Below are positions 1,306 to 60,680 of a stretch of DNA of 64,000 bases, piece by piece. This DNA is from Diadema antillarum (Eukaryota): NCBI RefSeq assembly GCF_040938485.1, contig NW_027272175.1:62001-126000 (forward strand), written 5' to 3'. Below the pieces are notes generated by a model. That model had not been told where the DNA came from. It ran no database searches and saw only the letters and a list, made by a program, of their open reading frames with translations. A program made the position numbers and the translations under genes. Numbering within the stretch: position 1 is the first letter of the stretch; each line of letters opens with the position of its first letter.

Positions 1306-2132
1306 CTTTCTTGATATTTCTCTATATGCTGCCTGTGGTGCGATGTCCTGAACAGCATGTCAGCCGTCAGGGAGCCCGGCGCCGGGAGGTCTGAGAGTTC
1401 CGCGTCCTCGTGGAGCGTTGGAAGATACCCTGTGTGTGCGTGATGGCTGCTGCTGGCATTGCTTGAACAGCCTTCTGAACTCTTCGGGCTCACGCCACCA
1501 TTGTTCACATATTGCACATAAACATCCGATTTAAGAAACATGGGGTAAGAAGTCTCTCGCATGTACTGCTCCACCTCCGCCTGGCTGGCATCAAAGAGGT
1601 TGCTGTTGACAGAGTTTGTCCTGATACAATCTGCGACATGGTTCCGGGTCGCAGTCTCTAGCCGGACGACTTGCTGGCCGTCCTTCTTAATAAATCTCCG
1701 ATATATCAACTTCGCCAGGTCGGCCCGGACGGGGTCATTGTTCGGCTTCTTCTTGAATCCCTGAGTGGCAAGCCAGAACATGAGCGGGTTCTCCGCGTTC
1801 TCCTGGACAAGGTAGTGTTTGAAGAGCTGGATCCCGTCCTCGTCAGCGAGCAGGGCGTGCAGGGACTCGGTCCATCTCGTGTACGGCGGGGTGATGGAGG
1901 CTGACCCCTCCGGCTCGAACCCCAGCGGTGCCTCATCCTGCGTCCCTTCCTTGGTGTCCTTCACGAGGTTGGATCGCCGCGGGGTCCCGCCTGAGTGGTC
2001 GCTGGTCTTTCCGCTCTTGATGGAGGAGGACACACTCCCTCGGTCCTCCGTCTCCTCACCCGGGACGGGAGGGCGCTCGCTCAGTTGGCTTCCCCCACTG
2101 TCAGCCAAGTACCTAAACACAGACAAACTCAT
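1306..2132 (-). CDS. axin: Axin, first coding exon (tankyrase-binding motifs plus RGS domain); gene continues left of the window
   Basis: The ORF from ATG 2132 encodes RPPVPGEE (TBM1), PRRS..LGFEPEGSASITPPY (TBM2) and WTESLHALLADEDGIQLFKHYL..FWLATQGF..IYRRFIK..FDASQAEVE..SYPMFLKSDVY (Axin-type RGS domain, about 1506-1874). Donor AAG|GTTGGT at 1306/1305 gives 827 coding nt (phase 2). The ORF-track tail LVHREYQF.. is intron read-through. Confidence 0.97.
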
Positions 2133-2288
2133 GTTGGTTGGCCACCATTCCTTTCGCGGTCGATGAAGTCCCTGCTATAGCAATGATCCTGGCTCCATCC
2201 TTGGCCGCCTGAAGGAGTGAATTCCACACTCTCCAGATGTGACCTGGGCCTCAAGTTGGTATCAGTGTTTTGCCGTTCAAGGAGCTAC
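2133..2288 (-). other. axin: 5'UTR part of the Axin ATG-containing exon
   Basis: Acceptor ttttcctttgtgtttttgcAG|GTAGC (AG at 2290-2289) lies 156 nt upstream of the ATG. Confidence 0.8.
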
Positions 2289-5200
2289 CTGCAAAAACAC
2301 AAAGGAAAATGTAGTAGCATTGTATTATAAAAGAAACCATCGCCATACATATTCTTAGTAATATTAGCATGTCCTCCTTGAGTATTTGCGGTATGTGTTC
2401 AGTGTTCTACATAGCACATCACTTCATTCTTTTCATTCTAAATTCAAATACAACAGAATGGATTCGAATAACATGAAATAGCAAAATGAAATGCAATGGA
2501 TTTCACACAAATGCTCTGCCCAATGTTCTTCAAATGTTAAAAAAAACAAAGCATAGGAATATCGAAGAAAATTCCAAATCAACACTCCATAAAACCTCAC
2601 TGGTACATATCAAGAGAAACCTTCCTAGACAAAAAAATTTCACAATATTTATAACACACATACAAGAAAAGCGTGATTTTAACAGAGAAGTGGGTTCCTT
2701 TGCAGCATAAGTCCACAGTTCAAACTTTTTTTTTCTCTCCCCAAATCTTTAGACTGCCAAGTAAAGCCACTAAACCCAAGCAATCTACCCTCAACAAAAC
2801 GCGCCATTTTGAGATTTGCCAGTCAAGGTGAAAGGTCAACTCTGGCATATGCCGAGTGCAGCCACCACTAGCATTCCAAATTTACCTGTAATTTGCCACA
2901 TACTCCACCCCCCCCCCCCAAATCGAGAGTACTACAATGCTATAAAATCATACTGCACATAACTTCTCACCAAAAAAACACTCTCTTCTCCTGCAGAGCT
3001 GTAGATGCACAGGATTGTGCCAACTGCTGATTTCATTGCTTTCCAATTCCCTACATACATACAATAGTACAGCGTGCATTACTGTAACATCCAAAGCAAT
3101 ACACATAGAATGTGGATATGAAGATTTACACATTCAGCGCCACACAATACGGTATTAGAAATGCAATGGTTAACACTCTCAAAAGCACACTTCTCACAGA
3201 CATGTCACAACACAGTCGGTCCTCACTGGTAGGCTAAAAACTTGCCATAAAATTTCATCTACACAATTATCTTGCCAGGAAGGCAAAAATCTACCTTTCT
3301 ACGACTGAAAATACGGTTACACATGCCTCGCAAAAATTCTACTCCTTCGTATTTTCATTACTCAACGACCGGAAAAGCAGAGTGAATGCGAGCATCGGCC
3401 GCCGCCATTGCACATGCCAAGCAAGTGGGAGCGCGAATGGCGAGTACATATGTAGCTGGCGGTAGTTACTGTGTGGACATGTGCATTTGCTATGCACAGA
3501 ATTGAAGCATACATAATAAATGTGGACTGAAAAGGCTGCCATCTTATTAACATACATTAAGGTCACATCCAATCTCCATACAACCTTTCTCGATGTAGCA
3601 TCCCTTCACGAAGGGAGGAAGAAGGGGGAAAAAAAAACAGAAGGAAAGAAAGCACACAGCCTGTCTACTCAAATCTTAGCAGAAGAGAGGGAGAGAGAGA
3701 AAATTCCCTTCACTTTCTGGACGGCTTCCGAACCCTGCAGTATACAATAAAGAGTATCTGGCCTGCTCATGATAATTTAAGATCCCGTCCATTCACTGCT
3801 GGCTCTTTCTCCCTCAGTACCCCTGCCTCCCTTCACAAAAGCAATTCAATGTGTTGTGTTGTGCTATTGAGGCTCACTGGGCCTTTTTTCCCCCCTCATT
3901 TCTTTCTCCCTTCTCTTCACTCCTTCTTTTAATAGTAGACTTGCAGGCCAGTGCAGAGCTTTGAATAGCTACTGCCCCCTTTTGTTGCACAGAAATCCTC
4001 AGCCCTAGCTTCTGGCATGGCAGGCTAGCTGCAAGATTGTTCATGTTTTTGTCAAAGGTCGTGGGTTAGGCATAATATTATGAAAGGTGGTGGTGGGGGG
4101 GGGGGGGGGGGGGGGGAGGTTAATGGAGGTAAAATTTTTAACTCTAGTCTATACTTTCTATTAACAAAGCTGCAATTGCTGTCTTCCTCTGACTACATAA
4201 CACAGGCTCACCGAAACATAAAAAAATGACATTTAAGGTGGTTTCAAAACACCTGCATTCTTATAAGGAACGAAGACATCATTGCTGAGTAAAGTTTCTT
4301 TGCATGTGTGTGTTTTCATATGTAATAAGTTTTTTTGATAATCTGTTTGTCCCAACATAAGACTGTCCCTTAATAAACTTATCTCTTAGCTTACACTGGT
4401 CAAATCACGAGCATTAAAAGGTGGCTATCTTGCCTCTATCAATAAAAAAAATAGGATGAGGATATTATCTAGAGACTGATGATAATGACAATTAGAATGT
4501 GGTACTTGTATATGACCTGAGGTATACAACACACAGTATGTTCCCAGTCGTTATCACCATTTTCTTTCATCACTTATTTTATTTTTGCAAATAGGCTGGG
4601 GATATAGAAGAGCACTTGTCTCTGCAGCCACAAAACAAAAATGAATACAGTTGAAATTTAAAAGAGATCACCAGCGAGTACAAACATGTATATACTGGCT
4701 GCACCTTTCAATTCAATGGCATCACAACATGACTTTCACACAAGTTACACAATGCAGGACAAGAACAGGTATATTATGCATAGTCCCACATGTGCACCTG
4801 TGTGTGTGTGTACACAATTCCTGTATGTGATTCTTGTCTCCATCAACACACTGATGCTAATTATGTCAATCTATTCATTCTGGTTCATGTTAAAAAGACC
4901 TGTAGTATGCTTTCTAACGGCAAGTCTTCAGAAAAGACAGGATAGAAAGTGGGACTAGCCTATTAAAAACACAGCCACTGACCAAAAAACAAAACAAAAA
5001 CCAAACAGAAAATTATGCTCTGATTGAACACTGTAAAAATACACAAATCTGAATATGAAAGAAGCATTCAGCCAAAAAAAAAAAAAAAAAAAAAAAAAAA
5101 CAGCGTTAAAGTTTCCTATAATACAATATAAAGCAGCTAGAGTAAAAACTAACCCATATGGAAGGTGCTTAAAATGTCAAAATATCACAAAATTCTCTGG

Positions 5201-5551
5201 TGTATCACCTCTAAAACTAATGATCAAACACTTGGTGTTTATGTTTATATGTTATTACGTACTTGTTGCTTTTGTCACTTGATGATACCAAATGCATAGT
5301 AAATACAGGATTCACAATTCAGAGAAATTTTGAATACCTTAGCCTATTCTGAGGAAACAGGAATATCTTACAAATGAAATTTGGCACAAGTATACCAAAT
5401 GTATAGTGTAATCTCAAGCCACTTCTTCACTACTTGCCACACTTGCTTCATATCAACAGATACAATTTCTTATAGTGTAAATTTTTCAAAACAAATTGGG
5501 ATAGCATACAGCCTGTAAACTGCATACAAACTGCTTCATTAAATCATTTGA

Positions 5552-59698: not shown

Positions 59699-59702
59699 TT
59701 AA

Positions 59703-60473
59703 AAGGATGGTATAGTTTTAGTCGAGATGGGAGATTCAGATTCTAACTTTTTACGTGAGATAATTAGAAACCACTTATGAAACATTAAAGAGCATACAAT
59801 AATAAGAGGAATTCAAAGTTTATGTGACGGAAATTGGTTTTTAAAGGCATAATTTACCATTTGTAGAAGAAACAAAAATCCAGCATTAGTGCTTTAAAAT
59901 AGTTCTAAAATGTGAGTTAGGGATAGAAACAACCACTGTAAAAAAATTGAATCCGTATAATAGATGTTAAGTATTGTTAAATACACAAAATGTGAACAAT
60001 AGTTATAATAAAAATGTTTCCAGACTAAACCGTACACAGTTATAGGTTAATGAGGAAAATACTGATATAAATATGTATAAATTCCTCCCCCCCCCCCAAA
60101 AAAAAAAAAAAATATAGGAATTCCACAAAAATTAATTTTTCACAAAAATTACACATTCCATCAACTTGATATGGACAAATGTTAAGGGTAGCAATTATTC
60201 CCCCTGTTTTCTGAAAGCAGTTAGTCAAGTGCTCTTTCATAACGCTACTAAAGTGAAATTTTGTGGAATTTTCTTTATATTTTCTTCATATTGTTGTCCA
60301 CACATACGTCATAACCTCTAGTAGTCTCTTCATCCAGCGGTTCCAACACTAAAACTTAAAAAATTCATAACTTTTGCATCGATTGTCCAATTTTCCTCAA
60401 ACTTTCACTCATGTGTTCTAGTAATTTTAGTGCTTTCACTCAATCCACATTGCTCTTTGGGTTTGGGTTCCCT
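59703..60473. mobile_element. Composite of K2 left end, K3 left half and K1-type right half
   Basis: 59703-59840 resembles the 45673 element start. TTAA|AGGCATAATTTACC at 59841. The right part ends GGGTTTGGGTTCCCT|TTAA like 53630. Confidence 0.75.
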
Positions 60474-60590
60474 TTAATACACACAAGTATTACCACTTTG
60501 TAAATTGCAGCCACGATACCATGTGACTAAGAAAGGTTTCTTTAAAAAGAATAACAAAACAAAAAGAGAAAAGAAGAAAAGAAACTGAAC

Positions 60591-60680
60591 CTTCTCTTGG
60601 TGGTCTAATTCCTGCTGTTGTAGTCTCCTCTCCAGCTGTTTGATTCTTTGTCTCTGATCGTCCAGCTCCCTCTGCACAGC
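60591..60680 (-). CDS. CEP112: CEP112-like coiled-coil exon (phase 0-0)
   Basis: Acceptor ctttcttcccatgccgtgttcAG, 90 nt encoding AVQRELDDQRQRIKQLERRLQQQELDHQEK, donor AAG|GTTCAG. Splices in frame to the next two exons. Confidence 0.88.

What the first reader, a model, noticed from the sequence alone, without database searches (positions are those of the whole stretch)
1306..60680. CEP112-to-Axin tandem gene pair: possible ancient microsynteny / genomic regulatory block
Seen: three spliceable coiled-coil exons ending at 58572 and the Axin 5' end are on the same strand, separated by about 49 kb with no other gene. Knowledge (from memory): human CEP112 and AXIN2 are adjacent on 17q24, on the same strand, with the CEP112 3' end pointing at the AXIN2 5' end; AXIN1 has no CEP112 neighbour. 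Inference: the linkage predates vertebrate genome duplication and may be held by Axin enhancers in the spacer or in CEP112 introns. The paralog that kept CEP112 is the Wnt-inducible AXIN2, so Wnt feedback may be the ancestral state. I cannot tell whether this pair is already catalogued.
Basis: partly seen in the sequence, partly recalled or inferred. Interest (0 to 1): 0.8.

Follow-up and report, generated by a model that had tools for sequence, protein, structure and literature searches.

The report
Sea urchin CEP112–Axin gene neighbours
In this sea urchin, the last exons of the centrosome gene CEP112 lie about 49 kb upstream of the Wnt-pathway gene Axin on the same strand, an arrangement also found in an acorn worm, a brachiopod and, as CEP112-AXIN2, in vertebrates, so the pairing is real and ancient but is one more case of a well-known kind.

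Summary
On the minus strand, three exons (60680-60591, 59503-59438, 58700-58572) splice into a 94-aa peptide. It is 100% identical to the C-terminus of Diadema setosum CEP112 and about 50% identical to the CEP112 C-termini of lamprey, gorilla, amphioxus, limpet and coral. The ORF at 2132-1306 is the first coding exon of Axin (RGS domain, tankyrase-binding motif).

The window comes from a diadematid urchin close to D. setosum but not D. setosum itself (83-90% nucleotide identity, colinear from 48.4 to 62.9 kb). I found no other gene in the spacer.

- **Linkage kept:** Saccoglossus (same strand) and Lingula (adjacent, but Axin inverted).
- **Not adjacent:** Porites and Patella.
- **Untestable within 10-kb flanks:** sea stars and amphioxus.

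In vertebrates, ccdc46 (=CEP112) flanking axin2, with an Axin2-like forebrain enhancer in a Ccdc46 intron, was published in 2011.

One new concrete item: a 99-bp promoter block (9171-9268) carrying a CCAAT box, a CRE, a GC element and a TCF site is conserved with Saccoglossus.

The regulatory-block reading is plausible but unproven. No other deep non-coding conservation was found, and TCF sites are not enriched. The four spacer N-gaps are intergenic, and continuity across them is untested. The scan had already noted the TCF site (s1-224723) on this same window.

The parts
60591..60680 (-). CEP112 third-from-last coding exon (30 aa, AVQRELDD...DHQEK)
   Evidence: AG/GT borders. 100% identical to D. 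setosum CEP112 residues 895-924.
59438..59503 (-). CEP112 second-from-last coding exon (22 aa, ILQVQHEY...SIQQ). A second possible acceptor lies 9 nt downstream at 59494.
   Evidence: The orthologues keep the three extra residues, so the acceptor at 59503 is the one used.
58572..58700 (-). CEP112 last coding exon (42 aa) with TAA stop at 58574-58572
   Evidence: The alignment runs to the last residue of the D. setosum, S. purpuratus and Patiria proteins.
55700..58571 (-). Probable CEP112 3' UTR / end of the transcription unit (inferred; the end is not fixed)
   Evidence: CpG observed/expected stays at 0.15-0.5 down to about 56 kb. Candidate poly(A) signals at 57586, 57025 and 55764. No RNA data.
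9269..55699 (.). Gene-free spacer with near-unbiased CpG content. Holds four N gaps, microsatellites and dispersed repeats.
   Evidence: CpG o/e about 0.8-1.4. No Pfam hit in the ten longest ORFs. No tRNA or Rfam match. Tandem repeats. No deep non-coding match to 10 other loci.
9171..9268 (-). Conserved Axin promoter block: CCAAT box, CRE-like site, GC/helper-like element, TCF site (GCTTTGATG, 9189-9197)
   Evidence: 82% identity over 99 bp to Saccoglossus L003 50312-50406, E=3e-17. Same orientation relative to Axin and on the same contig as Saccoglossus Axin exon 1.
9062..9170 (-). Putative non-coding Axin exon 1 (inferred)
   Evidence: Strong donor AAG|gtgaga at 9062 just downstream of the promoter block. 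An acceptor upstream of the ATG requires an upstream exon. No RNA evidence.
2289..9061 (-). Putative Axin intron 1, CpG-depleted (inferred)
   Evidence: CpG o/e 0.19-0.49 over 2-8 kb, against 0.86-0.88 at 8-10 kb and about 1 beyond.
1306..2288 (-). Axin first coding exon: acceptor at 2288, ATG at 2132, donor after 1306. Carries the tankyrase-binding motif and the RGS domain.
   Evidence: Pfam. Splice sites. 48% identical to Saccoglossus Axin exon 1. 77% identical to the closest database ORF.

Best explanation
Shown: this is the 3' end of CEP112 followed, on the same strand and with no detectable gene between, by the promoter and first coding exon of the single Axin gene of a diadematid sea urchin. 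The neighbourhood is inherited from at least the last common ancestor of deuterostomes and brachiopods. It is the invertebrate counterpart of vertebrate CEP112(CCDC46)-AXIN2.

Inferred: the pair behaves as a genomic regulatory block. Axin, a dosage-sensitive Wnt regulator, would draw on cis-regulatory elements spread through the roughly 47-kb unmethylated-looking spacer and probably into CEP112 introns. Breaks between the two genes would then be selected against, while CEP112 is an unrelated bystander.

The one element visible here is a compact promoter module (CCAAT, CRE, GC/helper-like, TCF site) conserved with a hemichordate. It suggests that Axin transcription is fed by TCF/beta-catenin, that is negative feedback, in Ambulacraria.
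For: CEP112 identity:
- phmmer of the spliced peptide against 1.84 billion proteins gave 83 hits at E<=1e-3. Nearly all of the long ones (about 840-1140 aa) match at or near their C-terminus; the two weakest (P0076, P0081) match internal coiled-coil.
- All ten hits tested carry DUF4485 and the named ones are called CEP112.
- The 94-aa version is 100% identical to the D. setosum CEP112 C-terminus.

Axin identity: RGS plus tankyrase-binding motif.

Synteny:
- Saccoglossus has CEP112(+) then Axin(+) (RGS, Axin_b-cat_bind, DIX) on one scaffold.
- Lingula has CEP112(+) then Axin(-), with 5.6 kb between their 3' ends.
- ccdc46 flanks axin2 in medaka, and a conserved p300-bound forebrain enhancer beside a Ccdc46 exon (mouse, elephant shark and medaka sequences tested) has Axin2 as its putative target (PMC3206014).
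- No gene is annotated in the first 10 kb downstream of CEP112 in D. setosum, Patiria or amphioxus. This fits a gene-free spacer there too.

Transcription-unit borders: the CpG profile marks two CpG-depleted units flanking a CpG-normal spacer.

Promoter block: E=3e-17 against Saccoglossus, unique in the window.
Against: - The pair is not adjacent in Porites (G-alpha gene 8 kb downstream) or Patella (ankyrin-SOCS gene 2.7 kb downstream).
- No CEP112 lies within 10 kb of Axin in Capitella or Priapulus.
- In Lingula, Axin is inverted, so its promoter points away from CEP112.
- Apart from the promoter block, no non-coding sequence in the window matches any of ten other loci. However, only Saccoglossus offered the homologous intergenic DNA.
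- TCF motifs are not enriched: 4 found against 2.0 expected, and 17 of 100 shuffles reach 4.
- No expression, chromatin or contact data were available.
- The four spacer N gaps leave the physical join formally unverified.
Confidence: 0.6

Rival explanations
1. Passive retention. CEP112 and Axin are ancestral neighbours that simply have not yet been separated in slowly rearranging genomes. No regulatory constraint holds them, and the 49-kb spacer is ordinary intergenic DNA.
For: Adjacency is lost in Porites and Patella and not seen within 10 kb in Capitella and Priapulus. Orientation is flipped in Lingula. There is no deep non-coding conservation in the spacer beyond the promoter. TCF motifs are not enriched.
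Against: Chance adjacency of two given genes is about 1 in 10,000 per genome. Survival in vertebrates, a hemichordate, an echinoid and a brachiopod over more than 500 million years is what systematic surveys attribute largely to cis-regulatory constraint (PMC3514665). After the teleost duplication, an exon remnant of the lost ccdc46 copy survives beside axin2 (1 of 2) and acts as an enhancer matching part of the axin2 pattern (PMC3206014).
Confidence: 0.3
2. Assembly artefact. The CEP112 end and the Axin end were joined wrongly across one of the four N gaps in the spacer.
For: Four gaps (158-876 N) lie between the genes. None could be bridged with reads or a second assembly.
Against: The same two genes are neighbours in Saccoglossus, Lingula and vertebrates, which a random misjoin would not reproduce. 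Window 48.4-62.9 kb is colinear with D. setosum. The CpG profile is continuous across the gaps.
Confidence: 0.04
3. Functional coupling of the two products. CEP112 is centrosomal and Axin has reported centrosome roles, so the genes stay together for co-expression rather than because one harbours the other's enhancers.
Against: The genes are arranged head-to-tail 49 kb apart, not divergent from a shared promoter. The orientation changes in Lingula. The two units have very different CpG/promoter architecture. Co-regulated ancient pairs are typically 5'-5' (PMC3514665).
Confidence: 0.06

Closest known systems
Vertebrate CEP112 (CCDC46)-AXIN2 locus (Eichenlaub & Ettwiller 2011, PMC3206014)
   Same: The orthologous gene pair. 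A large spacer or bystander gene carries Axin2-type regulatory activity. The paralogue without CEP112 (AXIN1) sits 0.23 kb from PDIA2 (PMC5722932).
   Different: Here there is one unduplicated Axin and a 49-kb spacer. The D. setosum orthologue of CEP112 spans about 30 kb, against hundreds of kb in mammals (my recollection). No enhancer has been shown here. I did not compare any human sequence.
Ancient microsyntenic pairs / genomic regulatory blocks (Irimia et al. 2012, PMC3514665), e.g. the Otx and Islet blocks
   Same: A developmental regulator next to an unrelated, intron-rich gene, with linkage kept across phyla and independent of orientation.
   Different: Axin is a signalling scaffold, not a transcription factor. 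Conserved non-coding elements inside the bystander were not found in the part of CEP112 present in the window. I could not check whether the pair is in that paper's list.
Wnt-responsive elements of mammalian Axin2 promoter and intron 1 (Jho et al. 2002, Mol Cell Biol 22:1172; cited from memory and from the reference list seen)
   Same: A probable non-coding first exon, a multi-kb first intron, and a TCF site at the promoter.
   Different: Only one conserved TCF site is seen here, embedded in a CCAAT-CRE-GC module shared with a hemichordate. Its Wnt responsiveness is untested, and sequence homology to the vertebrate elements was not examined.

Membership tests
CEP112 (centrosomal protein of 112 kDa) | C-terminal coiled-coil segment aligning to the extreme C-terminus of CEP112 orthologues | tested here: met
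   100% to D. setosum, 77% to S. purpuratus, 50% to gorilla and amphioxus, 38% to a sponge. Matches end at or near the last residue.
CEP112 (centrosomal protein of 112 kDa) | N-terminal DUF4485 domain (PF14846) | not testable with these tools
   The N-terminal exons lie outside the window. The D. setosum protein whose C-terminus is identical lists PF14846 among its precomputed Pfam domains. Ten other hits from the search were scanned directly and all carry it.
Axin | RGS domain preceded by the tankyrase-binding motif | tested here: met
   RGS 103 bits. AXIN1_TNKS_BD 28.7 bits, E=2e-6, just below the 29.9 cutoff.
Axin | Beta-catenin-binding region and C-terminal DIX domain | not testable with these tools
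   These exons lie beyond position 1 of the window. The syntenic Saccoglossus and Lingula genes have them.
Conserved ancient microsyntenic pair | Orthologous genes adjacent in distantly related phyla | tested here: met
   Echinoid (this window), hemichordate, brachiopod, vertebrates. Absent in coral and limpet.
Genomic regulatory block | Developmental regulator paired with a functionally unrelated bystander gene | tested here: met
   Axin (Wnt regulator) and CEP112 (centrosomal coiled-coil protein).
Genomic regulatory block | Conserved non-coding elements in the bystander's introns or the spacer | tested here: inconclusive
   Only the promoter block 9171-9268 is conserved. Only two CEP112 introns are in the window, and only one distant comparator held the homologous intergenic DNA.
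Genomic regulatory block | Enhancers in the bystander or spacer that act on the target gene | not testable with these tools
   No RNA or chromatin data. Reported for vertebrates: the p300-bound element beside a mouse Ccdc46 exon drives forebrain reporter expression in medaka, with Axin2 as putative target.

The most novel reading that the evidence does not exclude
CEP112-Axin is a bilaterian-wide regulatory block. The urchin/hemichordate promoter module (CCAAT, CRE, helper-like GC element, TCF site) would be the ancestral Wnt negative-feedback switch of Axin. After the vertebrate duplications, AXIN2 kept this landscape together with CEP112. AXIN1, pressed against PDIA2, lost it and became constitutive.
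Probability: 0.3. Interest if true: 0.55.

Novelty: new member of a known kind. Interest (0 to 1): 0.4.

Why it matters
If the block reading holds, it gives a genomic explanation for why AXIN2, and not AXIN1, is the Wnt-inducible paralogue. It would also place Axin autoregulation before the origin of vertebrates.

It supplies a defined 99-bp element that can be tested in urchin or hemichordate embryos.

On its own it is one more conserved neighbour pair among several hundred already described. The vertebrate half of the story was published in 2011.

Tried and rejected
- A word-index protein search with the spliced peptide found nothing. The length filter excludes full-length CEP112, so this says nothing.
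- The ESM Atlas call failed because the machine was busy.
- No sequencing runs were listed for the CEP112 end, so splice junctions, 3' end and spacer transcripts could not be checked with reads, and read laying was not used.
- My first exon B model (acceptor at 59494, 91 aa) was replaced by 59503 after comparison with orthologues.
- A possible internal donor in the last exon (AAG|gt near 58596) was rejected, because orthologues align through to the stop.
- I could not obtain full-length Axin proteins. Hits were limited to exon-1-sized ORFs by the length window.
- The Owenia look-up returned no DNA.
- Weak blastn hits at 15211-15292, 34401-34439, 57930-57973 and 61683-61727 look like simple repeats (several shifted, overlapping hits; only 61683-61727 lies in an array listed). 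The hit at 10488-10619 against Patiria is marginal (E=0.001) and in the wrong orientation.
- The supplements of the microsynteny catalogues are not held, and Jho et al. 2002 is not held.
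Full report
**Layout**

The window is 39% G+C and holds seven N runs. Both genes of the finding lie on the minus strand.

The ORF at 2132-1251 carries an RGS domain (E=1.6e-29). It also carries the Axin tankyrase-binding motif (E=2e-6, 28.7 bits against a 29.9 cutoff). A polypyrimidine tract and CAG acceptor at 2288 lie 156 nt upstream of the ATG, so at least one non-coding exon must lie further upstream. No other Axin exon is in the window.

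**The coiled-coil exons**

Three minus-strand exons have canonical borders:
- 60680-60591
- 59503-59438
- 58700-58572 (ends in TAA)

I first used an acceptor 9 nt further in (59494) and got 91 aa.

**Identity of the peptide**

A word-index search was blind because of its length filter. An exhaustive phmmer search of 1.84 billion representatives gave 83 hits at E<=1e-3. Nearly all of the long ones, about 840-1140 aa, match at or near their C-terminus; the two weakest (P0076, P0081) match internal coiled-coil instead. All ten that I scanned carry DUF4485 at the N-terminus. The named hits are 'centrosomal protein of 112 kDa' from sea star, crinoid, limpet, lampreys, zebrafish and gorilla; a jellyfish and a sponge hit carry only gene-model ids.

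| Species | Identity to the 94-aa peptide |
|---|---|
| Diadema setosum (CEP112 residues 895-988 of 988) | 100% |
| S. purpuratus | 77% |
| Patiria | 51% |
| Gorilla | 50% |
| Amphioxus | 50% |
| Lingula | 48% |
| Ephydatia (sponge) | 38% |

The refutation test 'best hit is not CEP112' therefore fails. The peptide is CEP112.

**Organism**

The window aligns colinearly with the D. setosum CEP112 locus from 48.4 to 62.9 kb, at only 83-90% nucleotide identity. It therefore comes from a close relative in the Diadematidae, not from D. setosum itself.

**N gaps**

The four gaps inside the finding are all in the intergenic spacer, so no reading frame crosses them. I could not test continuity across them. 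No runs were listed, and the D. setosum locus ends where the 10-kb flank ends.

The three gaps at 60780-61516 lie in a microsatellite-rich CEP112 intron. The sequences on either side are colinear with D. setosum. I filled no gap and read no gap letters from elsewhere.

Indirectly, a random misjoin would not recreate a gene pair that is also adjacent in three other lineages.

**Spacer**

- The ten longest ORFs have no Pfam hit.
- There is no tRNA and no Rfam family.
- The spacer contains microsatellites and dispersed repeats.

CpG observed/expected is 0.19-0.49 across 2-8 kb and 0.15-0.5 across about 56-61 kb. It is about 0.8-1.4 across 10-54 kb. In an invertebrate with gene-body methylation, this marks two transcribed units flanking an unmethylated spacer. 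That reading is an inference from general knowledge.

It places the Axin start near 9 kb and the CEP112 end somewhere between 57.6 and 55.7 kb, where candidate poly(A) signals lie. From the CEP112 stop to the Axin promoter block is 49.3 kb, and to the ATG is 56.4 kb.

**Synteny elsewhere (12 contig look-ups, 10-kb flanks)**

| Species | Result |
|---|---|
| Saccoglossus kowalevskii | CEP112 (+) then a 969-aa RGS / Axin_b-cat_bind / DIX gene (+) on scaffold GL012642.1; exon 1 confirmed by tblastn |
| Lingula anatina | CEP112 (+), then Axin on the opposite strand with its DIX exons 5.6 kb from the CEP112 end; adjacent but convergent |
| D. setosum, Patiria, Branchiostoma lanceolatum | No gene annotated in the 10 kb downstream of CEP112 and no unannotated Axin exon there; uninformative, but consistent with a long gene-free spacer |
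| Acanthaster, Liolophura | Only Pfam-less gene models downstream |
| Porites lutea | G-alpha gene 8 kb downstream of CEP112 |
| Patella vulgata | Ankyrin-SOCS gene 2.7 kb downstream of CEP112 |
| Capitella, Priapulus (Axin side) | No CEP112 within 10 kb of Axin |
| Owenia | Look-up returned no DNA |

One caveat on Saccoglossus. The CEP112 model there is truncated, and its last exons sit at L003 33561-34174 in a separately annotated 134-aa gene. The preceding exons are at 46157-46919. One exon is duplicated at two contig ends next to N gaps. Contigs in this draft scaffold are therefore probably mis-ordered, and the true spacing is uncertain, roughly 5-18 kb by my estimate. Strand and adjacency are unaffected.

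The linkage therefore goes back at least to the common ancestor of deuterostomes and brachiopods. It has been broken or loosened in some lineages.

**Literature**

Eichenlaub & Ettwiller 2011 (PMC3206014) report the following:
- In medaka, an exon remnant of the lost ccdc46 (=CEP112) copy flanks axin2 (1 of 2) and acts as an enhancer. Its activity matches part of the axin2 forebrain pattern.
- A p300-bound element next to the mouse Ccdc46 exon drives forebrain expression. So do its elephant shark and medaka counterparts. The authors call this element ancestral.
- They name Axin2 as the putative target.

This is the regulatory-block idea at vertebrate level, already in print.

PMC5722932 places human AXIN1 0.23 kb from PDIA2 in the ARHGDIG-PDIA2-AXIN1 cluster, so AXIN1 has no CEP112 neighbour.

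Irimia et al. 2012 and Touceda-Suarez et al. 2020 do not name the pair in their main text, and their supplements are not held. Full-text searches for CEP112 or CCDC46 with AXIN2 and synteny terms found nothing on invertebrates.

I did not check it here.

**A conserved promoter block**

I ran blastn of the window against ten loci from other phyla. Apart from coding exons and simple repeats, it gave one strong match: window 9171-9268 against Saccoglossus L003 50312-50406, at 82% over 99 bp, E=3e-17.

The block lies in the same orientation relative to Axin in both species. It is 7.0 kb upstream of the urchin ATG and 1.8 kb upstream of the Saccoglossus ATG. In Saccoglossus it is on the same contig as Axin exon 1. 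It is unique in the window and absent from the other loci.

Read in gene orientation, it contains:
- CTGATTGG (a CCAAT box)
- TTTACGTCAC (CRE-like)
- GGGCGGCGGGC (a GC box, a one-off match to the TCF C-clamp helper consensus)
- GCTTTGATG (a TCF/LEF site)

A strong donor (AAG|gtgaga, 9062) about 100 nt downstream fits a short non-coding exon 1. This parallels what I recall of mammalian Axin2 (Jho et al. 2002), a paper not held here.

The conservation is new evidence for that note.

By contrast, the optimal TCF motif is not enriched in the window: 4 found against 2.0 expected. The other noted element, at 31925-31960 (s1-224697), has no cross-species support from the comparisons I could make.

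**Interpretation**

Shown:
- the identity of both genes;
- their arrangement and the absence of detectable genes between them;
- inheritance of the neighbourhood across phyla;
- one deeply conserved promoter element with a TCF site.

Inferred:
- that regulatory elements in the spacer or in CEP112 introns hold the pair together;
- that Axin is Wnt-inducible in this animal.

The passive-retention rival keeps real weight. The pair is broken in a coral and a limpet and inverted in a brachiopod, and no further deep non-coding conservation was found. That said, the only distant comparator holding homologous intergenic DNA was Saccoglossus.

The idea that the single invertebrate Axin is a Wnt target is already used in the field, for example in Platynereis (PMC5996498).

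**Verdict**

This is a correct and careful observation, and the inference of pre-vertebrate linkage is correct. It is a new, or at least not visibly published, invertebrate extension of a known vertebrate gene pair within a well-known class of conserved neighbour pairs. Interest is moderate to low. The promoter block is its most testable product.

Noticed in passing
window 9171-9268 (-); L003 50312-50406 (+): A 99-bp non-coding block with a CCAAT box, a CRE-like site, a GC/helper-like element and a TCF site, 82% identical between this urchin and Saccoglossus, upstream of Axin in both. It is the only deep non-coding match in the window.
   Followed up: yes
L003 (Saccoglossus GL012642.1) 31223-47273: The last CEP112 exons (33561-34174, annotated as a separate 134-aa gene) lie upstream of earlier exons (46157-46919). 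One exon is duplicated at two contig ends beside N gaps. Contigs are probably mis-ordered and the CEP112 model is truncated.
   Followed up: partly
L001 1-2506 (Patiria); L002 1-23 (D. setosum): A Rho_GDI gene sits directly upstream of CEP112 in Patiria, and FBF1 sits upstream in D. setosum. In human, ARHGDIG-PDIA2-AXIN1 are clustered (PMC5722932). ARHGDIA and FBF1 lie on 17q25, the same arm as AXIN2 (my recollection). This hints at a larger ancestral RhoGDI-CEP112-Axin neighbourhood split between the two Axin paralogons.
   Followed up: no
L003 1-7623; L005 1-7216: An EF-hand protein gene of about 300 aa lies divergently upstream of CEP112 in both Saccoglossus and Branchiostoma lanceolatum. 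This may be a second conserved neighbour.
   Followed up: no
proteins P0012/P0091 and P0060/P0115: Lampreys carry two distinct CEP112 paralogues (906 aa and 940 aa) on different chromosomes. I did not check whether each sits beside an Axin paralogue.
   Followed up: no
window 59494-59503: Two in-frame acceptors 9 nt apart (tag|ATCTTGCAG|GTG) at the second-from-last CEP112 exon. This could be an alternative 3-aa (ILQ) inclusion.
   Followed up: partly
window 53281-53634 and 60103-60477; 28322-28651: Dispersed repeat copies. The first two match the same D. setosum CEP112-intron element at about 85%. The third is a palindromic element matching D. setosum in both orientations (MITE-like).
   Followed up: no
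window 60700-61900: A long GATA/TATC-type microsatellite tract in a CEP112 intron holds three N gaps (60780-60956, 61055-61183, 61346-61516) just outside the finding's range.
   Followed up: partly
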